The notes: generated by a model from the sequence alone, not told the origin. Counted from the first letter of the stretch, positions 22,600 to 64,000 are shown. The stretch: DNA of 64,000 nt from IMGVR_UViG_3300037110_000087:243125-307124, one strand, 5' to 3'. A program made the numbers and translations.

Positions 22600-22677
22600 C
22601 GCACCCGTACCCGTAGAAATGGAAACTGACCGGGTGATCACAGAGATTATTTGCAGGATGGTAATTAAGGGAAAGAA

Positions 22678-23193: not shown

Positions 23194-23239
23194 ACAGGGA
23201 TCCAGGGAGGATCTTTGCGGAATCGACCATGGAGGTCAA

Positions 23240-24343
23240 ATGTACAAAGCTATCGTTTATATTGGAAGATTTCAACCACTCCACAATGAACATTTGCAAA
23301 CTATGAAAGAAGGTCTGCAACTGGCGGAGAATCTGGTAATTGTGTTAGGTTCTTCCTATTGTCCCAGGAACGATTATAATCCATGGAACGAAGATGAACG
23401 TGAAACAATGATCATGGGCAGTCTCTCAAAGGAAGATCGATCAAGAATCTTTTTCATTAAGGCCAGGGATACCAAATACAATGACTCTCTGTGGGTTAAC
23501 ACAATTCACAGTGAATTGACTAAGATCCTGGCCGAACAAGAAATAAAAGATTCGAAATTCCCAACTATTCGATATCCAGCCTATGAGGGCCTTCCCGCTC
23601 AAGGAGTTGCTATCATTGGTTACGCGAAAGATAGCAGTTCTTATTATCTCCATATGTTCCCACAGTGGGACTTCATTGAACGTGTTGATCAAAAAACCAA
23701 ATGCTTCAGCGCTTCGGAGTGTCGGAAGAAATATTTTGTGGACTTAAGGGATAAAGAAGTCGCTGGGTCTGCGATCTCGGAGTTGCTGAATGTTCCCCAA
23801 CATGTAGGAGACTTCCTGGGATTTTGGAAGAACACAGACGCGTATAATTACGTGGTCAAGGAGCTTGAATTCCAGCAGAAATATACGGAACAATGGGAGA
23901 AGGCACCTTATAAGCCGATTTTCGTCACCACGGATGCGGTTGTGATTAAGAGCTTTCATGTCTTGATGGTAAGGCGCAAGAACAACCCAGGGAAGGGACT
24001 CTTAGCTCTTCCCGGTGGATTCCTTGATGCCACTGAAACCATTGTTGATTCAACCATCAGAGAAGTCAGGGAAGAGACCACTATTCAAATCAGTGCGGAG
24101 CAACTGAAAACCTACGTGAAGCAAACTAAGGAATTTGCTCATCCCTTCCGATCTAGACGGGGAAGGACCATCACGTTTGCTTCTTTGATTGCATTAGGCA
24201 ATGGTGTGTTACCCAGTGTGAGGGGTCGTGATGATGCAGCTGAGGCTCTGTGGATTCCTCTGAGTGAGATCCATGATCTCCGTTCTCAGATGTTTGAAGA
24301 TCATTATGACATCATCTGTAATCTTGTAGGAATCATGGAGTAA
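23240..24343 (+). CDS. bifunctional NMN adenylyltransferase / ADP-ribose pyrophosphatase (NadM-Nudix)
   Basis: YIGRFQPLHNEH; Nudix box PGGFLD..E......REVREET; GRDDA. Confidence 0.93.
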   Translation: MYKAIVYIGRFQPLHNEHLQTMKEGLQLAENLVIVLGSSYCPRNDYNPWNEDERETMIMGSLSKEDRSRIFFIKARDTKYNDSLWVNTIHSELTKILAEQEIKDSKFPTIRYPAYEGLPAQGVAIIGYAKDSSSYYLHMFPQWDFIERVDQKTKCFSASECRKKYFVDLRDKEVAGSAISELLNVPQHVGDFLGFWKNTDAYNYVVKELEFQQKYTEQWEKAPYKPIFVTTDAVVIKSFHVLMVRRKNNPGKGLLALPGGFLDATETIVDSTIREVREETTIQISAEQLKTYVKQTKEFAHPFRSRRGRTITFASLIALGNGVLPSVRGRDDAAEALWIPLSEIHDLRSQMFEDHYDIICNLVGIME

Positions 24344-24486
24344 CTATGGACAACAAACTGAGCTTTGAGGAATGGTGGGAACAGCTTCAGAAAGAGGTCT
24401 ATGCCGACATAGACCCAAAAGAATTGGCTCGTGACGCCTTTGAAGCTGGCTCAAGTTATTGTTACTACAATATCAACAGGTGAAAT

Positions 24487-24885
24487 ATGAAAGAAATTTC
24501 AAGATCTGCAACAGGTCGTTTTCCCTCTGATATTCCTAATCAGAGCAATGTACCCAAGACAGACGAAGGACAGACCTTTCTCAGTTCGTTCAAAGCTGGC
24601 TATCCAGAGGTAAGACTTTCTTTCGAAAACTTGGAAGAGCGTGTCATCCGGACCCTTAGTATTCCTGTCGAGCAGATTGATCGTAATAACAATTGGTTCT
24701 CTCAGGAAGCCTTTGAGAAGGCTATGATCCCACTTGAGGACAGTAATTATATCTTCCCAGTTACTGACAAAGACGGAGTTGTTACATTTCATGAATTCCA
24801 GGGTGTAACATTCACCCATTGCCGTACCACTTTTACTGACTCTCATAGAGTCTCGCCAGAAACCATTCAAGAGGAGAAATCTTGA
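24487..24885 (+). CDS. hypothetical protein
   Basis: ORF in plus run. Confidence 0.55.
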   Translation: MKEISRSATGRFPSDIPNQSNVPKTDEGQTFLSSFKAGYPEVRLSFENLEERVIRTLSIPVEQIDRNNNWFSQEAFEKAMIPLEDSNYIFPVTDKDGVVTFHEFQGVTFTHCRTTFTDSHRVSPETIQEEKS

Positions 24886-25199
24886 AACCAACTACTAAGG
24901 CCACCAACCCAGCCACCACATCCGTTAAGGAGAAAGCGGCTACTGCTACTCTGCTCGATGTAGCTCCGTTCAAGGGGGTTATTGACACTTTTGCGAAAGC
25001 CGGGAATTCCTCCTTCGCGATCCTGATCCCCGCCACGTGGTTCATGGAATTGGATGGGGTCAAGGGGGTGAAACTCAATCGCGAAGCTGCCTACCTGGGC
25101 ACCTTGTTTAACAAGGATGTCTATGACACCGATCTGAATCAGATCGAGATCCGGTATACTCGTCCGGATGGCACCAGAGGCATCGAGGTCTATAAGTGA
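24882..25199 (+). CDS. hypothetical protein
   Basis: AGGAG RBS, TTG start overlapping upstream stop. Confidence 0.65.
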   Translation: MKPTTKATNPATTSVKEKAATATLLDVAPFKGVIDTFAKAGNSSFAILIPATWFMELDGVKGVKLNREAAYLGTLFNKDVYDTDLNQIEIRYTRPDGTRGIEVYK

Positions 25200-25419
25200 C
25201 ATGGGCTTCCTTATTGGCTTCTTCGTCTATGTGATCATGATGAGTGCGGTTATGTTCCCGATTAGAGACATGATTACGGACCCTGTTTCCAAAGACATGG
25301 GTCCGATCAGGTTCCGAATGTATCCACTTTGGGTCTATGTCATCTTCGCACCTGTAGTGCTATTAGCCATAATTTTTAATCTTTTGTGGATGTTGCTCGT
25401 TGTGGAGTTGTGGAAGTGA
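25168..25419 (+). CDS. small membrane protein (true start likely MGFLIG)
   Basis: Two hydrophobic segments. Confidence 0.55.
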   Translation: MAPEASRSISDMGFLIGFFVYVIMMSAVMFPIRDMITDPVSKDMGPIRFRMYPLWVYVIFAPVVLLAIIFNLLWMLLVVELWK

Positions 25420-25685
25420 TTGAAGGTTGGATTTCCCTAGTACTCGCAACAATTTTCATGTTGCGAGTACTAGTTATGTTCCTATTCTACCGCAGATTTA
25501 CAATCCACCTTGCAAGCGGAGAATCAATTAAGATTGTTTGTACTTACTTTGCCCTTTCTTATAATGAGAGCGGGACAGTAACCGGTTGGCAGATGTCAAG
25601 AAAAGATAATGGGAAGACGTTGATTTATGCAAATCCTGCTCTCATTATCGCTGTCACTGACGAACTTCCTTATATTTGGGACTAA
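25386..25685 (+). CDS. membrane-anchored hypothetical protein
   Basis: One TM segment then a beta-rich domain. Confidence 0.55.
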   Translation: MDVARCGVVEVIEGWISLVLATIFMLRVLVMFLFYRRFTIHLASGESIKIVCTYFALSYNESGTVTGWQMSRKDNGKTLIYANPALIIAVTDELPYIWD

Positions 25686-25750
25686 GAGGGTTATAATAAA
25701 AGTAGACTCAGGGAGAGTCTACAACTAAATCGATCCAGGGAGGATCACAA

Positions 25751-27127
25751 ATGTCAAATCTTTCTAATTCAATTATCGATGTCGACTCATACAAGTTAAG
25801 CCATTTCAACATGTATCCGGATGAGACTCAAAAGGTCTACAGCTATTTCGAATGTAGAAATGGTGCGACCTATTCGAACCAGAAATTCTTCGGCCTTCAG
25901 TATCTCCTCAGGACCCAGTTGGTGAACCCGGTTACTCAGGAAGATCTAGAGGAAGCCTACGAGATCAGCAAGGAGCAGGGTTTGCCTCTCAACTATGCTG
26001 GTTGGCAGTACATCCTTGATGTCCATGATGGGATGTTGCCTCTTCATATCAAGGCTATCCCCGAGGGAATGGTCCTGCCAGTGTCCAATGCATTAATTAC
26101 CATCGAGAACACGGATACTAACCTACCCTGGCTCACCAATTATGTGGAGACTATGTTGTCCCGTATTTGGTACCCTATCACTATCGCGACCATGAGTCAT
26201 GAGGCGAAGAAGGTTATCAGTTACTTCAACGAGCAGACTGCTGACAATCCCGGTCTGGTCCCATTCCAACTGCATGACTTCGGTTCTCGTGGAGTAACCT
26301 GCCCTGAACAGGCTGCAATTGGAGGAATGGCTCACCTCACAAACTTTTATGGCACTGACACAGTTATTGCTCACCTGATGGTTAAAAAGATATATGGGTC
26401 TAAAAACCCTATTAGTTTTTCCGTGAACGCGACTGAACATAGTATCCAGACTTCCAAGGGCCGAGGAGGTGAGAAACAAATATTTGTGGATCTCCTTCAT
26501 AAATATCCAACAGGAATCCTCAGCGTGGTCATTGATTCTTATGACTATCAGAATTTTATTTCCGGTTATGGACTCGAATTTAAGGAAGAAATCCTTGCCC
26601 GAAATGGCAAGCTGGTCTTCCGCCCCGATTCTGGTGACCCAGTTGCCGTGAGTCTCGATGTGATCTCTCGTCTGGATCGGGTCTTCGGCTCTACCATCAA
26701 CACCAAGGGCTACAAAGTTCTTCATCCCCAGGTTGGAATGCTTTGGGGTGATGGCATCGACATCGAGGACATGGAAGTCATTCTGCAGAATCTCAAGAAT
26801 AATGGTTGGTCTTCGGACAATATTGTCTTCGGGATGGGTGGTGGACTGCTTCAGAAGGTCAACCGTGATACCATGCGGTGTGCTTTCAAGTGCAGTGCAC
26901 AGTTGCAGAACGGTAAATGGGTCGATATTTCCAAGGACCCGCTTGACTCGACCAAGAAGTCAAAGAAGGGTCGGCTCAAGGTAATCGAGACTCCCGATGG
27001 GATCATCACTGTCAATCAGAATGACGAGCGATACACCGACAGTGAAGATCTGTTGCAGACGGTGTTCCTCAATGGCGAGATCACGAAGACCTACACTCTG
27101 GATGATATTAGGGAAAGGAACTGGTGA
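25751..27127 (+). CDS. nadV: nicotinamide phosphoribosyltransferase (NAMPT)
   Basis: DVDSYKLSH, LHDFGSRG, ATEHS, SVVIDSYD, VFRPDSGDP, WGDGI, FGMGGGLLQKVNRDT, KKSKKGRL. Confidence 0.95.
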   Translation: MSNLSNSIIDVDSYKLSHFNMYPDETQKVYSYFECRNGATYSNQKFFGLQYLLRTQLVNPVTQEDLEEAYEISKEQGLPLNYAGWQYILDVHDGMLPLHIKAIPEGMVLPVSNALITIENTDTNLPWLTNYVETMLSRIWYPITIATMSHEAKKVISYFNEQTADNPGLVPFQLHDFGSRGVTCPEQAAIGGMAHLTNFYGTDTVIAHLMVKKIYGSKNPISFSVNATEHSIQTSKGRGGEKQIFVDLLHKYPTGILSVVIDSYDYQNFISGYGLEFKEEILARNGKLVFRPDSGDPVAVSLDVISRLDRVFGSTINTKGYKVLHPQVGMLWGDGIDIEDMEVILQNLKNNGWSSDNIVFGMGGGLLQKVNRDTMRCAFKCSAQLQNGKWVDISKDPLDSTKKSKKGRLKVIETPDGIITVNQNDERYTDSEDLLQTVFLNGEITKTYTLDDIRERNW

Positions 27128-51595: not shown

Positions 51596-53194
51596 ATGTC
51601 CATCAATAACCGTAGAACTACTCCCCTAGTTCCCTCTGCCATCGCTGTGGCCCAGGCTACCGCCCACAAGAATCATATGGCTGGCAATAGCTGGGAAATT
51701 ACCCCTATCACCCGTCTGAAGTGCATGGCGAGTTCCTGCTTCTTCGGAGAGCCGACCTATTACAACCCCAAAGTGGCTAGCTATGGCCACTTCTACGAGG
51801 GCAGCTTTCTGGGCCAGACCATGTTTGGCAAGGAATGGCATGGTTTAAATCCTGCGCAGAAGTTGGAGAAGGCGATCGATGAGGCCCTCGATTATGATGC
51901 TGAGGCGACTCTCGATTACGCTTTCGAACTGCGTACTCAGTTGAACATCCGTGCCACCCCTCAGGTGATCGCGGTCCGTGCGGCTAATATGGTTTCCCTC
52001 AAGGGTCAGGGAATCCGCCAGTATGCACTGGCTACCATTCAGCGTCCAGATGATGCTGCCACTCAGTTCGCCTACCATGTCGCCAAGTATGGCAAGAACG
52101 CTCCCATTCCCAACGCTCTCAAGAAGGCGTGGCGTGAGTATCTGATCAAGTGCACCGAATATGACTTGGCCAAATACCAGCTGGCCAGCAAGGAAGTCAA
52201 GATGGTCGACCTAATCAATATGGTCCGGCCCAAGAGCGAAGCTATCGACAAGTTCATGAAGGGCACCCTGTCCAACACCGGCAAGACCTGGGAAGCCATC
52301 ATCAGTGGTGGTGGCAGGTGGGATGAAGCGGTTGAAGTGATGGGTCACATGGCTCTGCTGCGCAATTTGCGCAACTTCGTCGAGAAGAGTGATGAAACCA
52401 CTCAGCGTAAGGTTGCTGACAAGCTGGTTGCTACTGCAGCCAAGGGTCATCAGCTGCCTTTCCGCTACTGGTCTGCCTTTAACGCCCTAGTCGAAGGTGG
52501 ACGGAGAGCACCCGGTTTCATGCTGGATGCAGTCGAGAATGCCCTGCGTGTCTCTCTGGGCAATCTACCCCGATTGCAGGGTAACAGCCTAGTGCTGTCG
52601 GACAATTCCGGTAGCGCTCGTCATGCCTTCCAGAGCAAAATGGGTTCAGTCCAGATCTCCACCATCGGTAACCTGCTGGCTGCGATCGTCGGCAAGATCT
52701 CCGATAATGCCAGAATTGGGGTATTCGGTGACCGGCTGTCCTGTGTCGAATCCCGTAAGTCCAGTTCGGTGTTCGATGACCTGAAGACTCTGAATAACCT
52801 AGGCGAAGGAGTCGGCCAGGGAACTGAGAATGGCATCTGGCTGGCGCTCCATCAGGCTATCGCGGAACGCGAACATTGGGATAATATCTTCGTCTGCAGC
52901 GATATGCAAGCCGGTCATGGTGGGCTTTATGGTTGTGGCGTCATCCCCAGCGAATACCTGTGGCGTACCAACAACCAGGGCTATGGTGCGGCCAGCAGCC
53001 CGGTCACCATTGATGTTCCTTACATGCTGCACAAGTACCGGAAGATCAATCCCAATGTCAACGTGTTCCTGATCCAGACCGCTGGATACGAGGACACCAT
53101 CATCCCTGAATACTTCGATCGCACCTACGTGATCGGGGGATGGAGTGATGGGGTGATCCACTTCGCTGATCAGATGATCAAGCTGCGTCAATGA
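51596..53194 (+). CDS. Ro60/Rsr TROVE-vWA RNA-binding protein
   Basis: N.MAGNSW, FFGEPTYY, R..LNIR..P, IQRPDD, MALLRNLRN, QLPFRY..A, VLSDNSGS MIDAS, SDMQ. Confidence 0.9.
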   Translation: MSINNRRTTPLVPSAIAVAQATAHKNHMAGNSWEITPITRLKCMASSCFFGEPTYYNPKVASYGHFYEGSFLGQTMFGKEWHGLNPAQKLEKAIDEALDYDAEATLDYAFELRTQLNIRATPQVIAVRAANMVSLKGQGIRQYALATIQRPDDAATQFAYHVAKYGKNAPIPNALKKAWREYLIKCTEYDLAKYQLASKEVKMVDLINMVRPKSEAIDKFMKGTLSNTGKTWEAIISGGGRWDEAVEVMGHMALLRNLRNFVEKSDETTQRKVADKLVATAAKGHQLPFRYWSAFNALVEGGRRAPGFMLDAVENALRVSLGNLPRLQGNSLVLSDNSGSARHAFQSKMGSVQISTIGNLLAAIVGKISDNARIGVFGDRLSCVESRKSSSVFDDLKTLNNLGEGVGQGTENGIWLALHQAIAEREHWDNIFVCSDMQAGHGGLYGCGVIPSEYLWRTNNQGYGAASSPVTIDVPYMLHKYRKINPNVNVFLIQTAGYEDTIIPEYFDRTYVIGGWSDGVIHFADQMIKLRQ

Positions 53195-54589: not shown

Positions 54590-54960
54590 CTGTTTCCCCA
54601 CACGCTGCAAGACAATCTGTAAAGGTTAATGGTAAAATAAAGATTCATTAAGGGCAAATTTTCATGATCAACTCTCTACCCAAACAATATTGCATGCCAA
54701 ATTCCATTGAATTTGGTCGTGGAATGCTTGTGTAAAGGGTCTTTCTGAATCTTTTTATGGAAAAGGCCCCTCGTCAAACAGGGGCCTCAACATTTCCGAC
54801 CCTGGTTCCTTAGATTAGTCCGCACAAATCGCAGAGCTACGAACTCTGAGAACGCCAGTTGAAATCTGGCAGGAACCACCACTGGAGCAAGTTGGATCAA
54901 ACAACTAGAAGTTAGAATAGATCCAAGGCAACAATCAAGGTTGAAGCCAAACAGAAGGGA

Positions 54961-54989
54961 TTGACAGAAACGAACAGTCAGGTTAAAAT
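54961..54989 (+). promoter_or_regulatory. sigma70-type promoter heading the ncRNA field
   Basis: TTGACA-17-TAAAAT. Confidence 0.8.
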
Positions 54990-55174
54990 AAAAGACAACC
55001 AACGTGATCATGGTCATATTGGGAATCCTTGGAAAATCAATAGCGTAATAAGTTTGTCGGGCGTTTTAGGACGCCTGAATGGTCCCACATCCTACGCGGA
55101 AGTGGGCAAGTCCATCGAGGCTGTATCCTCCTGTCGTGAGATAACGGGGCTAGTGGATTCAACAGCAAATATCA

Positions 55175-55279
55175 CCAACAGTAGTGATCGGAACGGTTAC
55201 TTCCCTACCAAACAAGAGAAAAACGGGTTCGCCCGTTGTCGTGGGTAAAACCACTCTCCGTTCCCCCTTTCTCTGTTGG
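55175..55279 (+). ncRNA. Y-RNA-like (Yrl-type) RNA, reduced core, copy 1
   Basis: CCAACAG/CTGTTGG outer stem, bulged nt, GGAACGG/CCGTTCC inner stem, GGTTACTTC motif, pyrimidine-rich 3' strand. Confidence 0.65.
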
Positions 55280-55291
55280 AAGCAATTCAGC

Positions 55292-55390
55292 GGCAGTAGT
55301 GATTGAAATGGTTACTTCGGATAAGCATCAGGTGTTGAGCCTGACTGGCGCGGTCGTCGAAGACCGCTACCCATTTCGCCTTTCTCTGTT
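55292..55390 (+). ncRNA. Y-RNA-like RNA, reduced core, copy 2
   Basis: GGCAG/CTGTT, GAAATGG/CCATTTC, GGTTACTTC. Confidence 0.65.
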
Positions 55391-55511
55391 AGCAACATCG
55401 AGGCTTGGCAATCGCTGAGCCTTAACTCCCTAGGGTAGTCAGGATTCAGTTCCTATCATCTTGTGTTGGAAGGGAGCTAGCAACGTAGAGTACACATAGC
55501 GTTGCAACAAT

Positions 55512-55589
55512 CGGCCTTTAGCGCAGTCTGGTTAGCGCGTCTCGTTTGGGACGAGAAGGTCCGGAGTTCGAATCTCCGAAGGCCGACCA
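55512..55589 (+). tRNA. tRNA-Pro(TGG)
   Basis: Full cloverleaf: CGGCCTT/AAGGCCG, TCTCG-TTTGGGA-CGAGA, GTTCGAATC, encoded CCA. Confidence 0.93.
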
Positions 55590-55639
55590 AGTTCGAATGG
55601 ATCTAGCTCCGACCATGTTATACTAAGGTAGGAGTTAGC

Positions 55640-56419
55640 ATGAAATATGAAGAATTGGGAAACAAAGACCAATACCTAGGGATGGTGACCCTAAGGTGTA
55701 CGACCTGCGAAAAGGAATTCGAACGTCAGGCAAAATACGTTCGATCTTCGATAAAGCTCCATCCGCAAGACAACATAGACTGTGGATGCAAGAATATCAG
55801 GAAGTGTTCCTTCTGTCAAAAATCATCACCTGAGGTAAGATTCACAAAGACTCACAGAGTCTGCGTTGATTGTAGGAAGACTTACAATCATGAATACTAT
55901 CAGGAGAACAAAGAAAAAGTGAATTCGGATAAAGTCTTGAGACAGACAAAGACTTACCGGGAGAACTTTGATCGGGTCAGCCAGTACAAAGAATCTCATT
56001 CCTGTGTTGACTGTGGTAGATTTTTCCCGGCTTGTGCGATGGATTGGGATCATCAAAGAGATAAACTACATAATATTTCTGAGATGGTCAAATTTGCGGC
56101 TTGGGATCTGATTGAAGCTGAGATTGCTAAGTGTGAGCTGATCTGTGCGGTTTGTCACAGGATCAGGACCGCGAAAGAAGGCTCTTACCATAGGGTTAGG
56201 GAGCAAAAACCGAAGGCGCGATCCACCAAGGGCTTCCGTCCTCCTAAAGACGAGTTGGTGAAGCTCGTGCAAACATTCTCAATTTCTGCGATCGGTCGCC
56301 AGTTTGGTGTGAGCGACACGATGGTTAGAAAGTGGTGCAAGATCTTTGACATCGACTACAAATTACTCAGCAAGTTCTCGTTGCAGAACATCTGCCCTGA
56401 GGTTTATGGTCCAGAATAA
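55640..56419 (+). mobile_element. HNH homing endonuclease in ncRNA field
   Basis: CVDCG...MDWDH...EIAKCELICAVCHRIRT. Confidence 0.85.
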
Positions 56420-56634
56420 GGACTCACTTTTACGCCCGGCAGTCGAACAAAGGTGAACAACCTCGACATGGGAAAAGCCGAATCTACGTAGCCCTTTGAG
56501 TCCTTCCAATGCGTTGATGGCCTAAATGCCATCGTTCAACGAAACGGTGCTGTGACACTAGCGCCTACATTCACCCTTCTTGAAGGGGGCAGCGGATAAT
56601 AGAATCCGAGTCGGATTGTGTAACCGACACCAAT

Positions 56635-56746
56635 GGGGGAGTAGCTCAGCATTGCATAGAGCGCTGCAGATCAGTCCAGATATCCATGGTTCCGTCTGGA
56701 GGAAATCCGCAGAGGGCGGCGGTATCAAATCCTCTCTCCCCTACCA
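56635..56746 (+). ncRNA. tRNA-like RNA with 41-nt expanded anticodon loop
   Basis: GGGGGAG/CTCCCCT-A-CCA, GCTC/GAGC D-arm, CTGC/GCAG stem, internal TCCAGA/TCTGGA hairpin, degenerate T-arm. Confidence 0.7.
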
Positions 56747-57358
56747 ATAGGTCCAAGTCGAACCTGATGATCGCACATCGAATCGTCTTCCCGTAGTCGG
56801 CACACCCAAGTAATGCGAGAAGTGGTGAAAAGTCGAAACAAAATTCCAGTGGGTCAAGTGGAACGAATTGGTGAAATGCCATAGTATAAATAGCGTGACG
56901 GTCGACCGTCACGCTCCTATCTTGGTTGTGCACAACAACCCATAGTTCTGAGTCCGATCTCGATCTAATGTGGATAAAGGATCTTGCTAGTCCTCCACCA
57001 TCGGGAGAATGCGAGGCCGCTGCAGCCGTTTTGCGCTCAGATAAACAACTTCCAGTGAGACAGGCCCAATGGGTTGAATAACTGGTTGCATAAATAACGG
57101 GACATGCCATTCCCTTTGTCTAAAATCGACCCTGGTTAAGGTAGGTGAGCCTTCCAGGTTCTTTGACATCGCAGATTCCATGAAGCCTATCAGCGAGGGC
57201 AGTCGACAGAGTAATGGAATCTATAGCATAGGTGACACCAATGCCCACTCCAATTTGTCGGTATCGGTTGGGTTAGTGGATTACGAATCCGGGCCTTCTA
57301 GTCGGGCTTAGTATACTGAGTCCTGGGTTAATGCTAGGTGAATCACCCAGGGCGCATA

Positions 57359-57435
57359 GCGGGGGTAGCTCAGAGAAAGAGCAGCAGGGACAATATCCTT
57401 GAAGGTCGGAGGTTCAAGTCCTTCCCCCCGCACCA
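57359..57435 (+). ncRNA. tRNA-like RNA with non-canonical anticodon loop (ACAATAT)
   Basis: GCGGGGG/CCCCCGC-A-CCA, normal D and T arms; no U33. Confidence 0.75.
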
Positions 57436-57492
57436 TTTAAATCAATACCCCCACAAGCGGAGAAGAAATTCTGTGATGCGAGTGGGACCCCT

Positions 57493-57571
57493 GGCGGGGT
57501 AGCTCAGATGCATTAAGAGTACCGGCTAATTAAGCTGGAAGTCAGGGTCTTGCAAACCCTCCCCGCCACCA
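57493..57571 (+). ncRNA. tRNA-like RNA (loop TAATTAA, T-loop CTTGCAA)
   Basis: GGCGGGG/CCCCGCC-A-CCA; CCGGC/GCTGG; altered T-loop. Confidence 0.7.
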
Positions 57572-57579
57572 GTACAAGT

Positions 57580-57662
57580 CTTTCAGCAGTGATTGGAACG
57601 GTTACTTCAAATGTGATTGAGCCGTGGGGCAACCCACTCTCCGTTTCGCTTTTCTCTGAAAG
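57580..57662 (+). ncRNA. Y-RNA-like RNA, minimal core, copy 3
   Basis: CTTTCAG/CTGAAAG, GGAACGG/CCGTTTC, GGTTACTTC. Confidence 0.65.
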
Positions 57663-57725
57663 GTTATTAGGTCCTTGCCATGGAGGCAAGAAGGAAACTT
57701 GGGCATGCACTCCCAACCTATCATA

Positions 57726-57796
57726 GGGCGGGTACCTCAGATGCGATAAGAGGTCCTCCAAGGAAGTCGGTGTGTTGCAAGCACTCCCGCCCACCA
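57726..57796 (+). ncRNA. tRNA-like RNA with vestigial anticodon arm
   Basis: GGGCGGG/CCCGCCC-A-CCA; CCTC/GAGG D-arm; CCT-CCA-AGG mini arm; T-loop GTTGCAA. Confidence 0.7.
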
Positions 57797-57839
57797 ATCT
57801 CAAAATCCTGACCCTGTAGTCTTGCTCCTATAACGAGCG

Positions 57840-58390
57840 CATAAGGCTGGACTGGGCATTGGCACCGGAAACCGCTATAGCAGCTAGGGCCGGAAACGCA
57901 AATGTCATAGCAGGGTCGCCCATCAAATCTCCATGGTGGTGGAGATCAACGTGGCGATTCACAAGAACGAGGGACGGTGAGGGAACGCAGAACGTAATCC
58001 TGTGCACAAGGGTTCTGACTAATCCCAAGAAACGGAGGCATTCTAGATATGCTTCATGGAATAGTTTCCTTCCAGCCACGTGTAATTCTTAGGATACAGA
58101 ACCCGGTAACGGGCTGAAACGAATCGAAGTGGCTTGTGCAAAGATCTCATCCGTAGGGGTGGGGGAGCCGGGAAAGGGTGAAGCGGAAGGTACAACCGCA
58201 GAAGCAACTCCCACGAGCAGAGAGGGCACTCTCACGGAGCCACTATCCTGAGAAGCAAATCCATCCCTGAGAACGGCAATTCAAGGGGAGAGAAACCCAA
58301 GTCCTGTCCTTGCCGGGATAAAACACACGCCACCCTGAGAAGGTGGAAATTCCTAAATAGGGCTGTAGGAGATGAGCGGTGTGAGGGTAT
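57840..58390 (+). ncRNA. candidate large structured RNA
   Basis: No credible ORF; many hairpins (CCCG-GTAA-CGGG, GAGAG-GGCA-CTCTC, CCACC-CTGAGAA-GGTGG); CTGAGAA three times. Confidence 0.45.
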
Positions 58391-58399
58391 ACAATCAAA

Positions 58400-58570
58400 C
58401 GGCGGATAGCTCAGTTGGAGTTATCAGAGCGCCACATCAAGGAAAAGTAGAAGAAAACTTGGGGCAAAAGCTGAGTGAATTCGCGACGATCTCACTGAGT
58501 AGCCTAGAGCAGAGTATTCTAACCAGTACTAGTGTGGAGGGCGGTGGTTCAAATCCATCTCCGTCGACCA
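58400..58570 (+). ncRNA. tRNA-like RNA with 96-nt anticodon-loop insert
   Basis: CGGCGGA/TCCGTCG-A-CCA; CCACA/TGTGG; GGTGG-TTCAAAT-CCATC. Confidence 0.75.
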
Positions 58571-58746
58571 TTTCGGTAGGTAGTTTAAACAGAACGCGGT
58601 GTGCAGGAAGACGAGGAACGAAGCACCAGTACAGCACGTGTAAACTGGCGAGTTGAACCGGGGGCCACTCAGTCTTTTTAGGACTGGTGACGCAAACAAA
58701 CACATTGAGATTGAGGGTTTGAGCCTCATCTACCGTCCAGTTCATT

Positions 58747-58827
58747 GGTGGAGTACCTCAGGGACAGGCAGAGGGACCTCGTAGCACGAGAGGAAAGTCG
58801 GTGGTTCAATCCCATCCTCCACCACCA
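58747..58827 (+). ncRNA. tRNA-like RNA with aberrant anticodon arm
   Basis: GGTGGAG/CTCCACC-A-CCA; CTCGT-AGC-ACGAG 3-nt loop; T-arm intact. Confidence 0.7.
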
Positions 58828-59006
58828 ATGTCAAGAACGGTAATCAATCCGTCGCCTTGTGATCCGGGTATGTTGGATCACCCCTCCACTCTGGGGAAAG
58901 AATCCGGGTAATGGTGGATCAACCGGAAGGCAAAGCAACAGATGCGGCAAAATTGAAAAGGCCCCGCGAGGAAGTCGACTCTAAATGTGCTGTTGCAAAG
59001 TTCAAG

Positions 59007-59145
59007 TTCGGCAGTGATTGTCACAGTTACTCCATGCTAAGGACGAGGATTTGGGATTCGAATTCCCATCGGGGCCTCCAATACAACCATTGGTCCCGTA
59101 GCTCAGGGGTAGAGCGCGTAAAACACTGTGTCGCCTTTCTCCGAA
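59007..59145 (+). ncRNA. YrlA-like Y RNA with circularly permuted tRNA domain
   Basis: TTCGG/CCGAA stem with bulged C, CACAG/CTGTG, GTTACTCC; then T-arm TGGGA-TTCGAAT-TCCCA, loop-closed acceptor CGGGGCC/GGTCCCG, D-arm GCTC-AGGGGTA-GAGC. Confidence 0.8.
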
Positions 59146-59150
59146 TCAAT

Positions 59151-59223
59151 TGGCCCCTCGTCTAATGGAGGACAAGTCCCACACCGGGAAGAAACGCGGG
59201 TTAGAATCCAGCGGGGCCAACCA
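59151..59223 (+). ncRNA. tRNA-like RNA with 5-nt anticodon loop
   Basis: TGGCCCC/GGGGCCA-A-CCA; TCCC-ACACC-GGGA; T-loop TTAGAAT. Confidence 0.65.
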
Positions 59224-59242
59224 AATCTCATAGGAGCGCATC

Positions 59243-59554
59243 GTGCAAATCGATAATCTACCAACCAAAGTTGATCTCAGGGACAGATTCTTGTTTCCTC
59301 CCATTTATGATCAAGGTGAACTCGGATGTAGTGTATGTTGTTCTTCTGCAGCGATCTTGGACATGACGAAAATTAATCAGATGATCGGCAAGAAAGTCCG
59401 AAAGGATAAGAAGCCATTCAAATCAACATTTAAGGTCAACACCGTCAAAGGTGTGGTGGACCATCCCATTCTGCATGTGCCCTGTTTCACCTTCGAAGAG
59501 GATGATTCCTACGTTGAGTGCAGACGGTGCATCGCAGTCGAAGATTCCCAGTAA
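59243..59554 (+). pseudogene. papain-like (C1) peptidase N-terminal fragment
   Basis: LPTKVDLR...PIYDQGELG; remainder of the domain absent. Confidence 0.5.
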
Positions 59555-60057
59555 AAGGTAGTATTGAGGAACGTACCAATAAGTGGCTATGAAGAGCTAC
59601 AGGTGTTCCAGGTGGGTGTACAGTCCTACCACCTTCTTACCTCTTCACAGGGCTGGGAATACGATCGGCTAAGTAGTACCCGAATGCGAACCTTAGCTGA
59701 AGGGGCTTATACTCCTAAAAATAGTTTTAAGATTTTCTAAAAGGAGAAAAAGAGATAATAAAAGATAAGAGATGTACTTGGTATGCAGCTTGGCATTATT
59801 GTATTTATCTTCCATTAGATGATGACAAACTTTATCAAATAGCAATTCCGTATCATGGATATTTTGAACACTTACAAAGACTTGAAATAACTAACGAACG
59901 TAATGCAGATGATAATGATTTGTCTTTCAATTATTAGAATATAGCTTGGATGACTCTACTCGTAAGAATGAGTCGAAAATGTTGGTAACAGCATATAAGT
60001 TCGTAGCTCCAAGCTATTAAAAAATTCAAATTAAGATTCCGATTAGTAAGAATATGA

Positions 60058-60597
60058 CTATTTACAGAGCTTGTTAGCACAAGCCTGGAATTTTCTTTGG
60101 TCATTGTTCTGAATTCCTTCCAGCTTACTCTCTCCATGAATGGGTTCATAATGGAAGATTCCATTTAATTCGAAGGCTAGCTTCAGTGATGGAATAAAAA
60201 TGTCTAGTTCGGAATTGATGGTATCTTTCCGGTTGAAATGAATCTTAAGATTTGGGTACAATAAAGTAATTTGCTCTTCAAGCCATTTCTCTAGTTTGGA
60301 TCGAGTGGTTCCATGAGTCTTATGAAGGTTATTATATCTAGTCCCGCAAGAAATTGAGCAGAACAATCTACCTGATTTCGATTTCTTGAGATCTTTGGGA
60401 TTTTTGGTGATCAGTTCATTACATTGTGAGCATCTAGTGGCAAATGTAGTTGAATAATGGATATAATAACAATCCACACAACAGAAGACCTTTGATTGAT
60501 TATATCCATGATCTCTCTCAAATGGTCTGTTACATTGACAACAAACTAAGTTTACCATTTTTGTCATTTCAGCTCCTATTACTATGGTATCATGCAA
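60058..60597 (-). mobile_element. PD-(D/E)xK-type homing endonuclease with zinc-finger repeats, C-terminally short
   Basis: CxxC...FCSxxC repeats; ELDIFIP..KLAFELNG.FHY. Confidence 0.7.
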
Positions 60598-60658
60598 TCC
60601 AGGGATTCGATTTTCGGTATTCGAGTCCCTCCATTCCTCGTTATTTTGGGTTCGTATT

Positions 60659-60734
60659 GGATCGGAAGCTATATTGGTTTAGCGCTGGCGTGAAGTCCCA
60701 GAGGATGCAGGTTCGAAGCCTGTCCGATCCACCA
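60659..60734 (+). tRNA. tRNA-Phe(GAA)
   Basis: GGATCGG/CCGATCC-A-CCA; loop GTGAAGT; C31-C39 mismatch. Confidence 0.75.
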
Positions 60735-60769
60735 GTTTTGTTCTCAAAACTATTTAACTTGGAGAGTAT

Positions 60770-61567: not shown

Positions 61568-61686
61568 AGGTTAGAACAGTTTCAGAACTAGTGGTTGAGA
61601 AGTCACTAGATGTTGAGTCGGGGTAAGCCACAGACATGGCCCGGTAATCTAGCCGGAATACAGTTTCTGCGATCTTCGACAAGTTA

Positions 61687-61774
61687 GTAAGGGCTAATGA
61701 CCCATACAAAGGTAGAGCGGCCTCTATGTTAGGCTTGCCGGGGGTCATGATCCGGTGACTAAAACGACTCTACC
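61687..61774 (+). ncRNA. 88-nt structured repeat, copy A
   Basis: GTAAGGG..ATGACCCAT.CAAAGGTAGAGCGGCC...CGACTCTACC. Confidence 0.6.
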
Positions 61775-61984
61775 TCCAATCGACTCCCTGCGGCGGTTCA
61801 ATTTAACCCGCCCTACTGAGCGATGATATGCATACTCGGCGGCGACCGACTTCCGGATGGCCCAGTGAAGTTTCAGTCCGGAGATTTTGAGAAGTCCACC
61901 CACTTAAGACCGTATCCAAGTCTGTAATTGTTTCTCTTTGGGGATCCGACAGATAAGGCTAGTGGATGAAACGGTTTCCTTTTG

Positions 61985-62072
61985 GTAAGGGTCGATGACC
62001 CATGCAAAGGTAGAGCGGCCACCATGCTTGGCCCTCTGGAGGTTTGCTCCGGAGAAAAACAACGACTCTACC
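61985..62072 (+). ncRNA. 88-nt structured repeat, copy B
   Basis: Same motif with compensatory changes. Confidence 0.6.
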
Positions 62073-62479
62073 ATCCATTTCGTGCCTTTCTACCCCGACC
62101 AAGGATGATTGACACGACTCTATGGGGATGAACAGATTCGACAGGTTTATGCCCTGAGTGTAGCGCAGGTAGAGGAAACCGATGGCCTCTCAAAAATCGG
62201 TAAAAACACAACTGCCGAAGACTTTCTTCTCCAGGCTGCGTAAGCAGCATCCTCTAAGCGATCGTTTGGTAGCTTAGTTGTAAGGAATCTCAAGGATGGT
62301 TCGCCTACCGAGAGAGTTCACAAACTAGATTCCGATGAAATGTTCTAGTCGGAATGACACAAAGGACATAAGTCCTCGATTAGAGTTGTCCGGTTTACTC
62401 TACAGAGGTCACTAGAAACGGACTAAACCTGTGAATGAACTACCTTAGGAATTTTCTTGGACAGGACTAGCATAAGTCC

Positions 62480-63043
62480 TCATCTCCACCTTGTTTGGCT
62501 AGTGCGTCCGTCCCAATCACCAAACAGACCGAGCGCATTAGCCTTCCTCATGCCTTCACAGACCACGAGCCAAGCGTTATAAGGCATAATTCCCCTGGTC
62601 ACATTACATCGGTAACAAGCAGGGACCACGTTGCCCTTCGTGTGACCTTTAGAATTGTCAATTCTATCTAATGTCATATTGGTGATAAGGTTGTCACCAC
62701 AGTAAAAGCAAGGATTAGAAATTTGTGCCAAAATAAATTTGACATCCAGATCCGAGACCCTTTTCTTCTTCTTGTCCGCTGATTTACAATATTTGAGAAT
62801 TAAGGCAGCGCGGACTTCTAAATTGGTTGACCTAGTTTCAATCTTCCTCTGAATTGATCTTCTTTGCGCTGCTTCTGGTGTAGTTTTCATTTTCTTGTAG
62901 GATAATCTTCTCAGATTGTCGCAGGTCTTACAAAGAGAGCGAAAGTATCTGACTCCTTTGATGGTTTGGGCGTAAGGCTTAACTTCGGGATATTTCTTAT
63001 TGCAACCAGAACACTGCCAAGATTCTAAGGTGATTCTTTCCAT
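62480..63043 (-). mobile_element. HNH homing endonuclease
   Basis: CFYCGD...TLDRIDNSKGH...NVVPACYRCN. Confidence 0.85.
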
Positions 63044-63622: not shown

Positions 63623-63735
63623 TGGCTCATACCTCAGCTGGTAGAGGGCTCGCCTGAATCGTTATCGTAGTTTCGGACTGCGAATAACCTGTAGTAAGCG
63701 AGATGTCGGTGGTTCGACTCCACCTGGGCCAACCA
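63623..63735 (+). tRNA. tRNA (Ile-like body) with 44-nt anticodon loop containing an intron-like hairpin
   Basis: TGGCTCA/TGGGCCA-A-CCA; CTCGC/GCGAG; GGTGG-TTCGACT-CCACC; insert GTTAT-CGTAG..CTGCG-A-ATAAC. Confidence 0.75.
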
Positions 63736-63857: not shown

Positions 63858-64000
63858 ATCGCTAGTGACCGACTGGTAAGGTCGTCCCTGATGGGGACGT
63901 AAATGCGCGGGTTCGAGTCCCGCTCTTGAAGGTAACTTCGGGATAGCTCAGGTGGTAGAGCCGTCGTGGACGTTAAAATGTGGGTTCAAATCCTGCCTAG
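63858..64000 (+). ncRNA. double tRNA-like element, truncated by window end
   Basis: D1-AC1-T1, acceptor hairpin TCTTGAA-GGTAAC-TTCGGGA, then D2-AC2-T2. Confidence 0.6.

What the first reader, a model, noticed from the sequence alone, without database searches (positions are those of the whole stretch)
57359..59223. Array of CCA-ended tRNA mimics with destroyed anticodon arms
Seen: five elements (57359, 57493, 57726, 58747, 59151) keep well-paired acceptor stems, D-arms, T-arms and CCA, but have loops of 3, 3 and 5 nt or 7-nt loops lacking U33. 57493 and 57726 are paralogs sharing an AGATGC D-loop and TTGCAA T-loop. Paired stems with altered loops argue for selection rather than decay. Known: anticodon nucleases (PrrC, RloC and others) and tRNA-sensing enzymes recognise the tRNA body. 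Inference: decoys or sponges against tRNA-targeting defences, or ligands of Ro60 or aminoacyl-transfer enzymes.
Basis: partly seen in the sequence, partly recalled or inferred. Interest (0 to 1): 0.82.

Follow-up and report, generated by a model that had tools for sequence, protein, structure and literature searches.

The report
Non-decoding tRNA look-alikes beside phage Ro60
A giant phage from peat carries, just downstream of its Ro60 gene and mixed with four Y-RNA genes, about a dozen tRNA-shaped genes that keep the tRNA body and CCA tail but cannot read codons; they look maintained by selection rather than decayed, but their job is still untested.

Summary
The five elements are real and sit at the stated coordinates. 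Each has a 7-bp acceptor stem, a 4-bp D stem, a 5-bp T stem (one mismatch in el5) and an encoded A73-CCA. None has a normal anticodon loop. Frames this perfect occur 10 times on the + strand at 54.8-63.7 kb, against 0.5 per shuffled window.

The elements lie in an RNA island downstream of a Ro60 (TROVE) gene. The island also holds:
- four Y-RNA-like genes, one of them YrlA-type;
- three ordinary tRNAs and a tmRNA;
- about seven more aberrant tRNA-likes, with anticodon arms expanded by 60-120 nt, or without an acceptor stem.

The Y-RNA family is conserved beside Ro60 in every relative I fetched and in Bacillus phage G. No orthologue of the tRNA-like array exists in the collections; the nearest Ro60 is 52% identical. 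Covariation across genomes therefore could not be tested.

Internal evidence argues against plain decay: intact stems and tertiary core, well-formed replacement hairpins, and conserved loops over compensating stems in el2/el3.

Best reading: RNase P-type processing releases stable, non-decoding tRNA-body RNAs and also trims the neighbouring Y RNAs. A role in trans, as decoy or Ro60 partner, is possible but unproven. A decoy for anticodon nucleases is unlikely.

The parts
51596..53194 (+). Ro60 / TROVE-domain protein gene (532 aa)
   Evidence: Pfam TROVE at 34.8 bits. PDB hit to Thermus phage phiLo Ro60, 9KOP/9L5Y, E 9e-12. Best isolated-phage relative is Bacillus phage G gp540 at 35.6%.
54804..54881 (+). 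tRNA-Arg(ACG), canonical anticodon arm, encoded CCA; unusual D-loop/T-loop (CC / UUGAAAU)
   Evidence: ARAGORN; Rfam 55.6 bits; parse.
55176..55278 (+). Y-RNA-like gene 1 (small, YrlB-like)
   Evidence: Shared 5' and 3' motifs (families D2-D4); fold; anchored closing stem 6/6.
55291..55391 (+). Y-RNA-like gene 2
   Evidence: closing stem 5/6.
55512..55589 (+). tRNA-Pro(UGG), canonical
   Evidence: 66.6 bits.
56635..56747 (+). tRNA-like with expanded anticodon arm, enlarged 15-nt T-loop, G1.U72, ends ACCA
   Evidence: Sequence; fold. A metatranscriptome contig covers 56418-56710.
57269..57349 (+). Weak candidate tRNA-like (acceptor 6/7, T-loop GUUAAUG, CCCA end)
   Evidence: Descriptor scan. 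This quality is within chance level, so it is only a candidate.
57359..57435 (+). el1: tRNA-like, loop ACAAUAU (C33, A34), D-loop without GG
   Evidence: 46.9 bits; z -3.3.
57493..57571 (+). el2: tRNA-like of normal length, loop UAAUUAA (A33), D-loop AGAUGCAUUAA, T-loop CUUGCAA
   Evidence: (z -3.6). Not found by ARAGORN or Rfam.
57581..57661 (+). Y-RNA-like gene 3; starts 9 nt after the CCA of el2
   Evidence: 6/6.
57726..57796 (+). el3: paralogue of el2 with a 4-bp/3-nt hairpin at the anticodon position
   Evidence: Metatranscriptome contigs cover 57663-57808 and 57625-57771.
58400..58570 (+). tRNA-like whose anticodon stem CCACA/UGUGG encloses about 95 nt of extra hairpins
   Evidence: Zero-mismatch frame; fold z -2.3.
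58574..58739 (+). tRNA-like frame with a 116-nt middle; D-loop AAACA complementary to T-loop GUUUGAG; ends UCCA
   Evidence: Zero-mismatch frame. The MFE fold does not recover the cloverleaf, so this is less certain.
58747..58827 (+). el4: tRNA-like, canonical D and T loops, 5-bp/3-nt hairpin at the anticodon position
   Evidence: (34.4 bits).
59006..59146 (+). YrlA-type Y RNA: Y stem enclosing T-arm, closed acceptor stem (3' strand followed by UCCA) and D-arm
   Evidence: Fold; Rfam YrlA 21 bits over the tRNA-like module; closing stem 6/6. An RNA-library contig covers 59010-59155 at depth 26.8.
59151..59223 (+). el5: most degenerate of the five (T-stem G.A, T-loop UUAGAAU, U1-A72); starts 4 nt after the YrlA-type RNA
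   Evidence: A related DNA contig departs from the window upstream of 59190.
60659..60734 (+). tRNA-Phe(GAA), canonical
62124..62491 (+). tmRNA
   Evidence: Rfam 86.2 bits.
63623..63735 (+). tRNA-like with about 37-40 extra nt forming an extended anticodon arm (or a short intron in a Phe/Ile-like loop)
   Evidence: Rfam tRNA 50.8 bits with a 40-nt insert; ARAGORN intron mode; zero-mismatch frame.
63859..63930 (+). tRNA-like with good D, anticodon (CUGAUGG) and T arms, but acceptor only 4/7 paired and no CCA
   Evidence: ARAGORN; Rfam 19 bits, model positions 8-63; sequence.
63937..64000 (+). Start of a further tRNA-like with a 4-bp/3-nt hairpin at the anticodon position, cut by the contig end
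   Evidence: Sequence read directly. The Rfam 'YrlA' hit at 63906-63961 is the junction of two tandem tRNA-likes.

Best explanation
The five elements belong to a family of about a dozen phage genes for non-decoding, tRNA-body RNAs. These genes are interleaved with Ro60-associated Y-RNA genes, real tRNAs and a tmRNA.

Proposed working:
1. The island is transcribed on the + strand as one or a few long precursors. This is inferred. There are no terminators between the genes, and the one good sigma-70-like promoter is at 54961-54989.
2. Each element offers an intact 12-bp acceptor/T minihelix, an elbow and an encoded ACCA. The host tRNA-maturation enzymes would therefore cut and trim it like a tRNA: RNase P at the 5' side, and endo/exonucleases back to CCA at the 3' side. 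This is inferred from the known substrate rules of RNase P. M. smegmatis YrlA is cut by RNase P and carries a CCA tail (PMC4201824).
3. These cuts also define the ends of the neighbouring Y RNAs. el5 starts 4 nt after the YrlA-type RNA, and Y RNA 3 starts 9 nt after el2. The adjacency is shown; the cleavage is inferred.
4. The released RNAs are stable and CCA-ended but cannot decode. They have no U33, or only 3-5-nt loops, and none has the acceptor or variable-arm features that I recall allow charging without the anticodon. The sequence facts are shown; the consequence is inferred.
5. In free form they present only the upper half of a tRNA. They may occupy proteins that read that half. Which protein, if any, is unknown.
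For: The frames are far above chance and all lie on one strand.

Within the five elements:
- Body stems are intact in 79 of 80 pairs.
- U8, A14, R15/C48, A21 and A73-CCA are kept.
- The hairpins at the anticodon position are better than shuffles (fractions as stable 0.002-0.16).
- el2 versus el3: 4 two-sided and 2 one-sided pair-keeping changes, none broken, and 17 of 20 loop positions identical.

The Ro60 and Y-RNA context is solid. TROVE is confirmed. I counted 19 Y-RNA copies in the window and 7 relatives, 15 with 6/6 and 4 with 5/6 anchored closing pairs and 17 different stem sequences, against 1.8% of control positions. More copies turned up later in L099 and in phage G.

A tRNA or tRNA-like directly after a Y RNA recurs in other lineages. 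In L099 an aberrant tRNA-like (loop CCUUUAA, C33) follows a Y RNA by 5 nt. In L087 tRNA-Pro follows a Y RNA by 8 nt.

All 11 contigs from three metatranscriptome runs fall on non-coding parts of the 6-kb stretch and none on its ORFs, while a DNA run does cover the ORFs.

The overlapping ORFs have no protein family, and no long ORF appears under stop reassignment.
Against: - No read ends were mapped. The runs are kept as short contigs, so processing sites and even transcription of el1, el2 and el4 are not shown.
- Elements standing 3-7 nt apart (58400 / 58574 / 58747) have nothing between them to release, so punctuation cannot be their only role.
- In relatives L088 and L002 each Y RNA has its own promoter and terminator, so Y RNAs do not need tRNA-like neighbours.
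- el5, 56635 and 63859 show real degeneration.
- A related strain lacks the 5' two-thirds of el5 at this place.
- No orthologous array exists in the collections, so there is no covariation across genomes.
Confidence: 0.4

Rival explanations
1. Decoys or sponges acting in trans. The released tRNA-body RNAs soak up host factors that recognise the acceptor end or the elbow rather than the anticodon. From my own knowledge such factors include the CCA-modifying toxins CapRel and MenT/AbiE-type nucleotidyltransferases, and enzymes I recall cutting the acceptor or variable region (PtuAB of retron Ec78, bacterial Schlafen). This would protect real tRNAs.
For: Many copies with different acceptor stems but the same body. 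The body and CCA are conserved while the anticodon arm is free to vary. The phage carries other RNA-repair or counter-defence genes, an Rnl1-type ligase and an NAD salvage cluster. Relatives place RNA ligases and a Thg1-like gene beside Ro60. The literature supports tRNA-centred phage-host conflict (PMC10264068; PMC7824862).
Against: No target is identified and no defence system is known for the unknown host. Abundance is unknown, and RNA-library contigs do not cover el1, el2 or el4.
Confidence: 0.25
2. tRNA pseudogenes. A decaying tRNA array in a large genome, perhaps scrambled by the three homing-endonuclease genes in the island, with no function of its own.
For: There is a visible gradient from canonical to degenerate: el5 with a T-stem mismatch and an altered T-loop, 56635 with a 15-nt T-loop, 63859 without an acceptor stem. 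Three HNH/EndoVII-like ORFs sit in the island. A related strain differs inside el5. Relatives and phage G carry ordinary tRNA arrays at the same place.
Against: Only 1 mismatch in 176 body pairs across 11 frames, while 8 of those 11 have abnormal anticodon regions. The abnormal regions are tidy hairpins, not debris. The tertiary core is kept. el2 and el3 diverged by compensating stem changes while their odd loops stayed the same. Aberrant tRNA-likes recur beside Y RNAs in distant relatives.
Confidence: 0.15
3. Direct partners of the phage Ro60 particle. The single-stranded ACCA tail threads into the Ro60 cavity as misfolded-RNA substrates do, or the tRNA-like bodies act like the tRNA-like module of YrlA but as separate molecules, to gate Ro60 or tether it to host enzymes such as PNPase.
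For: They share strand and island with Ro60 and four Y RNAs. Known Y RNAs carry tRNA-like modules of unknown role (PMC4201824). Phage phiLo Ro60 binds phage Y-like RNAs and host PNPase (PMC12135203). This locus shows every topology, from free tRNA-like to permuted tRNA-like inside a Y stem.
Against: The five elements lack the conserved Y motifs (AGUGA...GGUUACUUC...UUCU) and the long closing stem that mark the Ro60-linked family. They lie 4.2-6 kb from Ro60, beyond the 4-kb rule used for YrlA. No binding data exist.
Confidence: 0.12
4. Unconventional but working tRNAs. For example nuclease-resistant decoders with altered loops (el1, el2), or precursors whose odd or expanded anticodon regions are spliced or repaired into normal loops by phage enzymes.
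For: el2 has normal tRNA dimensions and a 7-nt loop. el1 and el4 pass the Rfam tRNA threshold. 63623-63735 could give the loop CUGAAAA after removal of 37 nt. The phage encodes an Rnl1-type RNA ligase. Phage tRNAs are known to carry anticodon-loop changes.
Against: No element has U33. el1 and el2 would have A34 anticodons (AAU, AUU), which I recall are not used by bacteria outside tRNA-Arg(ACG) (own knowledge). Loops of 3-5 nt cannot present an anticodon. No bacterial machinery is known for short non-group-I tRNA introns (own knowledge). The window uses the standard code (long ORFs).
Confidence: 0.05

Closest known systems
YrlA-type bacterial and phage Y RNAs (Rfam RF02553; Chen et al. 2014, PMC4201824)
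   Same: Encoded near Ro60 on the same strand. They contain acceptor, D and T arms that mimic tRNA and lack a decoding anticodon loop. M. smegmatis YrlA is cut by RNase P and carries CCA. One true member of this kind is in the array, at 59006-59146.
   Different: In YrlA the tRNA-like module is permuted: the acceptor is closed by a loop, and the RNA ends form the Ro60-binding stem in place of the anticodon stem. The five elements have normal tRNA topology, free acceptor ends with encoded CCA, a short hairpin at the anticodon position, and none of the Y motifs.
mascRNA / MALAT1-type tRNA-like processing signals (own knowledge)
   Same: A cloverleaf with a reduced anticodon arm sits directly 3' of a non-coding RNA. 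RNase P cleavage makes the upstream RNA's 3' end, and the small tRNA-like RNA gets CCA. el5 lies 4 nt after the YrlA-type RNA, and L099 has the same layout.
   Different: That system is eukaryotic and a single copy per locus. Here there are many tandem copies, most of them not adjacent to a cargo RNA. Cleavage is not shown.
T4 RNAC and RNAD, stable small RNAs of the phage tRNA gene cluster (PMC3014915)
   Same: Non-tRNA stable RNAs encoded inside a phage tRNA cluster, with function still unknown.
   Different: No sequence relation was tested. T4 has two such RNAs among eight tRNAs and no Ro60. Here the aberrant forms outnumber the real tRNAs.
Phage tRNAs with anticodon-loop changes that evade host anticodon nucleases (van den Berg et al. 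2023, PMC10264068)
   Same: Phage tRNA-array genes whose anticodon loops depart from the host pattern, interpreted as counter-defence.
   Different: Those remain 7-nt-loop decoders that replace cleaved host tRNAs. The present elements cannot decode at all.
tmRNA tRNA-like domain and 'mini' TLD RNAs
   Same: tRNA-shaped, CCA-ended, with no anticodon arm. Such mini-TLDs occur beside Ro60 in relatives L003 (8088-8170) and L090 (2749-2816).
   Different: The TLDs have G3.U70 (alanine identity) and a tmRNA-type D region. None of the five elements has G3.U70.
Engineered 'tRNA scaffold' for expressing RNAs in bacteria (own knowledge)
   Same: A cargo RNA replaces the anticodon loop, and the tRNA body ensures processing and stability. 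The elements at 58400, 58574, 56635 and 63623 have this layout.
   Different: That is a laboratory device. A natural counterpart is only suggested here. The five reported elements carry no cargo.

Membership tests
Decoding tRNA | Cloverleaf with 7-bp acceptor, D arm, 5-bp T stem with 7-nt loop, discriminator plus CCA | tested here: met
   There is one T-stem mismatch in el5.
Decoding tRNA | 5-bp anticodon stem with a 7-nt loop carrying U33 and a purine at 37 | tested here: not met
   el1 has C33, el2 A33, and el4 A33/C37 in ARAGORN's reading. el3, el4 and el5 fold with 3-5-nt loops.
Decoding tRNA | Recognised by tRNA finders above threshold | tested here: inconclusive
   el1 (46.9 bits) and el4 (34.4 bits) pass Rfam's 29 bits and ARAGORN's default. 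el2, el3 and el5 are not found at E<=10. el5 is found only at a relaxed ARAGORN threshold.
Decoding tRNA | Elbow nucleotides G18 G19 / U54 U55 C56 A58 | tested here: inconclusive
   Present in el4. el5 has GG but A56. el1 has a canonical T-loop but no GG. el2 and el3 have neither, but carry mutually complementary D and T loops.
Y RNA / YrlA (RF02553) | Encoded close to a Ro60 gene on the same strand (4-kb rule of Chen et al.) | tested here: inconclusive
   Same strand. The five lie 4.2-6.0 kb from the end of the Ro60 gene, just outside 4 kb. The four Y-RNA-like genes lie at 2.0-6.0 kb.
Y RNA / YrlA (RF02553) | 5' and 3' ends pair in a long bulged stem carrying the Ro60-binding motif | tested here: not met
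   The ends form a plain 7-bp acceptor stem. The family motifs AGUGA..GGUUACUUC..UUCU are absent from the five.
Y RNA / YrlA (RF02553) | tRNA-like D, T and acceptor module | tested here: met
   but in unpermuted order.
Y RNA / YrlA (RF02553) | Binding to Ro60 | not testable with these tools
   Needs pull-down or EMSA.
tRNA pseudogene | Random loss of pairing and of conserved nucleotides throughout the molecule | tested here: not met
   79 of 80 body pairs are intact and the tertiary core is kept. The changes are concentrated in one arm, which still forms a hairpin. el5 alone shows some general decay.
tRNA pseudogene | No conservation or compensation in relatives | not tested
   No orthologous array is available. 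The only hint is the X2 contig, which breaks inside el5.
tmRNA tRNA-like domain | G3.U70 alanine identity pair | tested here: not met
   The 3-70 pairs are G-C, C-G, G-C, U-A and G-C.
tRNA-like processing signal (mascRNA type) | Lies directly 3' of a non-coding RNA whose 3' end it defines | tested here: inconclusive
   True by position for el5 (4 nt after the YrlA-type RNA) and partly for el3 (64 nt after Y RNA 3). Not true for el1 or el4. Cleavage is not testable here.

The most novel reading that the evidence does not exclude
The phage has turned most of its tRNA array into a toolkit of anticodon-less tRNA-body RNAs. These work together with its Ro60/Y-RNA particle as a counter-defence or host-takeover device. 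They might act as decoys for enzymes that attack or sense the acceptor end or the elbow of tRNA, or as detachable tRNA-like modules that bring tRNA enzymes or PNPase to Ro60. On this reading the locus also catches the path by which Y RNAs acquire tRNA-like modules from phage tRNA genes. Free, expanded, acceptor-less and permuted forms all stand side by side.
Probability: 0.2. Interest if true: 0.85.

Novelty: new variant of a known kind. Interest (0 to 1): 0.6.

Why it matters
The purpose of the tRNA-like module of bacterial Y RNAs has been open since 2014. This locus offers many natural variants of that module in one operon-like island, as separate genes and with the anticodon arm shortened, lengthened or swapped for a Y stem. 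That makes three questions directly testable with cloned DNA: what reads the tRNA body, whether RNase P shapes Y RNAs, and whether such RNAs blunt tRNA-directed immunity.

It also shows that standard tRNA finders miss a class of phage RNA genes; three of the five are invisible to them. In addition, a distinct and widely spread Y-RNA family, with the motifs AGUGA-N7-9-GGUUACUUC and UUCU, accompanies a large clade of phage Ro60 genes. Bacillus phage G carries it with AGCGG in place of AGUGA, and its copies are not annotated.

If the elements turn out to be inert remnants, the finding reduces to an unusually degenerate tRNA array.

Tried and rejected
- Orthologues of the array. There is no DNA match in the phage collection. 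Pattern scans of IMG/VR with the Y motif and with the el2/el3 D-loop plus T-loop signature hit only the window's own contig, apart from chance hits.
- Ro60-anchored searches. These covered IMG/VR and JGI metagenomes and 5.8 billion proteins. The closest relatives are 50-53% identical, too far for alignment of the tRNA-likes.
- Downstream small ORF. The real gene is 63 aa. Its homologues lie next to ordinary tRNA arrays or in unrelated contexts (L093, L094).
- Terminal repeat. The contig has none, so the array could not be followed past the window end.
- MAFFT alignment of the elements misaligned the 5' halves. I replaced it with a structural parse.
- Pairwise 'compensatory changes' between most elements are no more than any two tRNAs show. 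I use only the el2/el3 pair, whose loops prove common descent.
- D-loop/T-loop complementarity in el2, el3 and 58574 is not clearly above chance. It is kept as a lead only.
- The first, unanchored test of Y closing stems did not discriminate from random positions. I replaced it with the anchored test.
- The Rfam 'YrlA' hit at 63906-63961 is the junction of two tandem tRNA-likes, a false-positive type that Chen et al. also describe and filter out.
- Promoter-like and terminator-like sites are not enriched.
- The spacers 56748-57358, 57797-58399 and 58828-59005 match no RNA family and are only weakly structured.
- Coding was rejected. The overlapping ORFs have no family, and no long frame opens under stop reassignment.
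- Read laying gave contigs only: no molecule ends and no variants in the five elements.
Full report
WHAT THE WINDOW IS. The window is the last 64 kb of a 307-kb IMG/VR contig from a peat metagenome. Its gene content is that of a jumbo phage:
- an Rnl1-type RNA ligase;
- an NAD salvage set;
- an SMC-like ATPase;
- an actin-like gene carrying an intein.

It has no DNA match among deposited phages, and the contig has no terminal repeat. Long standard-code ORFs are present throughout.

THE OBSERVATION. RNAfold returns a cloverleaf for each. A structural parse shows:
- a 7-bp acceptor stem, a 4-bp D stem and a 5-bp T stem with a 7-nt loop, with the single exception of a G.A mismatch in the T stem of el5;
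- U8, A14, a purine at 15 facing C48, and A21;
- A73 followed by an encoded CCA.

What stands at the anticodon position is abnormal in every case.
- el1: loop ACAAUAU, with C33.
- el2: loop UAAUUAA, with A33.
- el3: 4 bp closed by 3 nt.
- el4: 5 bp closed by 3 nt.
- el5: 4 bp closed by 5 nt.

ARAGORN calls only el1 and el4. Rfam's tRNA model passes only those two, at 46.9 and 34.4 bits. It sees nothing for el2, el3 and el5 even at E<=10.

I scanned the window with a descriptor requiring 16 of 16 body pairs plus NCCA. It finds 10 frames, all on the + strand between 54.8 and 63.7 kb, and one AT-rich frame on the other strand. One hundred shuffles of the window give a mean of 0.5 and a maximum of 3. 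The shared D-loop and T-loop of el2 and el3 are confirmed as well.

The five elements are part of a 9-kb RNA island that begins downstream of a Ro60 gene at 51596-53194. That gene hits Pfam TROVE. It also matches the solved Ro60 of Thermus phage phiLo.

The island contains four copies of a Y-RNA-like gene, at 55176-55278, 55291-55391, 57581-57661 and 59006-59146. Each has:
- a closing stem;
- the 5' motif (Y)AGUGA-N7-9-GGUUACUUC;
- an inner helix formed by the variable N7-9 with a distal strand;
- the 3' motif UUCU next to the closing stem.

The fourth copy encloses a T-arm, a 7-bp acceptor stem closed by a loop, and a D-arm. That is the permuted tRNA-like module that defines YrlA (Rfam YrlA, 21 bits over that module). 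Its acceptor 3' strand is followed by UCCA. This recalls M. smegmatis YrlA, which is cut by RNase P and carries CCA (PMC4201824).

The same Y family stands beside Ro60, on the same strand, in every relative I fetched: L002, L003, L085, L087, L088, L089, L090 and L099. It also fills the unannotated gap upstream of gp540 in Bacillus phage G, where the 5' motif reads AGCGG rather than AGUGA. An anchored test covered 19 copies (the window plus L002, L003, L085 and L087-L090; L099 and phage G were fetched later). It gives 15 with 6/6 and 4 with 5/6 closing pairs, built from 17 different sequences. Only 1.8% of random positions do as well. YrlA-type members in L089 and in phage G reach 33 and 36 bits. 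Phage Ro60 with Y-like RNAs is a known pairing (PMC4201824; PMC12135203).

MORE ABERRANT tRNA-LIKES. Besides three canonical tRNAs (Arg, Pro, Phe) and a tmRNA, the island holds further tRNA-shaped genes.
- 58400-58570 has a normal body, and its anticodon stem encloses about 95 extra nt.
- 58574-58739 is a perfect frame with a 116-nt middle, although the MFE fold does not recover the cloverleaf.
- 63623-63735 has a 37-40-nt extension of the anticodon arm.
- 56635-56747 has an expanded anticodon arm and a 15-nt T-loop.
- 63859-63930 has good D, anticodon and T arms but no acceptor stem.
- A further short-hairpin form is cut by the contig end at 63937.

Non-decoding forms therefore outnumber real tRNAs. 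Three HNH/EndoVII-type homing-endonuclease-like ORFs sit among them.

SELECTION OR DECAY. Orthologues would settle this, and none exists in the collections. The nearest Ro60 among 5.8 billion proteins is 52% identical. Signature scans find only the window's own contig. The argument therefore rests on internal evidence.
1. Across the 11 frames there is one mismatch in 176 body pairs, whereas 8 of the 11 have an abnormal anticodon region.
2. The abnormal regions are tidy hairpins. Their folding energy is reached by only 0.2-16% of shuffles.
3. The nucleotides that build the tRNA core are kept.
4. el2 and el3 share an odd D-loop and T-loop, so they descend from one ancestor. They differ at 6 of 16 stem pairs, four by changes on both sides and two by one-sided wobble changes, with none broken. 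They differ at only 3 of 20 loop positions. That is the pattern of a structured RNA with important loops.
5. Distant relatives also have aberrant tRNA-likes beside Y RNAs. In L099 a tRNA-like with loop CCUUUAA (C33) and odd D and T loops follows a Y RNA by 5 nt. In L003 a Y stem encloses D, anticodon (UUU) and T arms. L003 and L090 carry mini tmRNA-like domains.

Against selection, el5, 56635 and 63859 are visibly degraded. A DNA contig of run X2, at 90-99% likeness downstream, departs from the window upstream of 59190, inside el5.

EXPRESSION. Parts of the region occur in peat and permafrost metatranscriptomes. When three such runs were laid on 54750-60745, all 11 contigs fell on non-coding parts: 54750-54887, 56418-56710, 57063-57292, 57625-57808, 57837-58093 and 58857-59155. 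None fell on the ORFs, which a DNA run does cover. My own rough estimate of the chance of that pattern under DNA carry-over is about 0.02, and the contigs are not independent. One contig matches the YrlA-type RNA almost end to end. el3 is covered; el1, el2 and el4 are not. The runs are kept as contigs, so no molecule ends can be read.

HOW IT MOST LIKELY WORKS. The elements present exactly what I recall RNase P and the 3'-trimming enzymes needing: a 12-bp acceptor/T helix, an elbow and ACCA (own knowledge). There are no terminators between the genes, and sigma-70-like sites are not enriched. The best promoter-like site lies at 54961-54989, upstream of Y RNA 1.

I therefore think the island is transcribed in long precursors and cut up by the host tRNA-maturation enzymes. 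This releases the tRNA-likes as stable CCA-ended RNAs. It also sets the ends of the Y RNAs that abut them.
- el5 starts 4 nt after the YrlA-type RNA.
- Y RNA 3 starts 9 nt after el2.
- In L099 and L087 a tRNA-like or tRNA follows a Y RNA by 5 and 8 nt.

The released RNAs cannot decode. They also lack what I recall as the anticodon-independent identity marks, G3.U70 and a long variable arm, so they are probably uncharged (own knowledge).

Punctuation alone does not explain the elements that stand 3-7 nt apart. Nor does it explain the conserved loops of el2 and el3. A further role in trans is therefore likely: occupying a protein that reads the upper half of tRNA, or cooperating with Ro60. That role is unidentified. 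The forms with large insertions look like natural 'tRNA scaffolds' carrying a cargo.

In relatives L088 and L002 each Y RNA has its own promoter and terminator. The coupling to tRNA-likes is thus one solution among several.

A decoy against anticodon nucleases is the least likely version, because those enzymes read the loop that is missing. Decoys for factors that target the acceptor end or the elbow remain possible. Ligands of Ro60 are possible by context, but the elements lack the Y motifs. Use by aminoacyl-transfer enzymes is unlikely without charging.

COMPARISON WITH KNOWN SYSTEMS. The closest are:
- YrlA-type Y RNAs, which have the same module in a different topology, with a true member in the array;
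- mascRNA-type processing signals, which have the same layout for el5;
- T4 RNAC and RNAD, unexplained stable RNAs in a phage tRNA cluster;
- nuclease-evading phage tRNAs, which differ in still decoding;
- tmRNA tRNA-like domains, which differ in having G3.U70.

I found no description of an array of free, anticodon-less, CCA-ended tRNA-like genes in a Ro60 locus. That library is incomplete.

VERDICT. This is a real and non-random feature. It is a new variant of tRNA mimicry in a known phage Ro60/Y-RNA setting. The function is unproven, and cross-genome comparison is not possible at present.

Noticed in passing
L003 8088-8170; L090 2749-2816: Mini 'tmRNA' genes that consist of the tRNA-like domain only. 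The L003 copy is 83 nt and scores 52 bits, above Rfam's threshold; the L090 copy is 68 nt. Both have G3.U70. They lie in the tRNA/Y-RNA region beside Ro60 in two relatives.
   Followed up: partly
L096 (Bacillus phage G) 6881-7941 and about 5727-5846: At least five tandem, unannotated Y-RNA-like genes (GAWGCGG-N6-ACAGYUACUUC ... AUCUCA) lie upstream of the Ro60 gene gp540. A YrlA-type copy scores 36 bits with Rfam YrlA. The tRNA array and tmRNA follow downstream, the same architecture as the window.
   Followed up: partly
L003 9016-9143: A Y RNA whose closing stem replaces the acceptor stem of a tRNA-Lys(UUU)-like body. The D, anticodon (loop CUUUUAA) and T arms are in normal order, and Rfam tRNA gives 56 bits over model positions 6-65. 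tRNA-Lys(UUU) is the classic PrrC target, so a decoy role would make more sense here than for the five elements.
   Followed up: partly
L099 2601-2761: A Y RNA is followed 5 nt later by an aberrant 'tRNA-Lys(UUU)' with C33, D-loop AACAA and T-loop UUUGACG.
   Followed up: partly
window 54804-54881: The otherwise canonical tRNA-Arg(ACG) has D-loop AGUCCGCACA and T-loop UUGAAAU. CC and G56 stand where G18 G19 and C56 normally are, possibly a swapped elbow pair.
   Followed up: no
window 61600-62123: Two roughly 300-nt paralogous units (61684-61745 and 61982-62043, 77% alike) each have a GGUAGAG ... CUCUACC long-range pairing. The 9-mer ACGACTCTA occurs exactly three times in the window, at 61764, 62062 and 62114. 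The last copy ends 1 nt before the tmRNA 5' end. Unexplained.
   Followed up: partly
window 55640-56419 (+), 60058-60597 (-), 62480-63043 (-): Three HNH / endonuclease VII-type homing-endonuclease-like ORFs are inserted in the RNA island. They could drive rearrangement of the tRNA-like genes.
   Followed up: partly
window 56748-57358, 57797-58399, 58828-59005: Long non-coding spacers between the tRNA-likes match no RNA family and are weakly structured at most (z -2.3, -1.6, -0.06). Metatranscriptome contigs nevertheless lie on all three.
   Followed up: partly
window 59190-59381 versus run X2: A related strain in another peat sample has unlike sequence upstream of 59190, inside el5. It also lacks 126 nt at 59255-59380.
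   Followed up: no
window 2849-4894 (-): A Volactin-family (actin-like) ORF is interrupted by an intein with a LAGLIDADG domain.
   Followed up: no
window 20388-27127 (+): An NAD-related cluster of NAD kinase, NMNAT-NUDIX fusion and NAMPT surrounds an Rnl1-type RNA ligase. In relatives, RNA ligase or Thg1-like genes lie next to Ro60 (L099 and the P0131 contig).
   Followed up: no
L003 3963-4038; L092 4301-4397; L097 2334-2409: tRNAs with a CUA anticodon (amber suppressor type) occur in three Ro60-encoding relatives. This hints at stop-codon reassignment in those phages. The window itself shows no sign of it.
   Followed up: no
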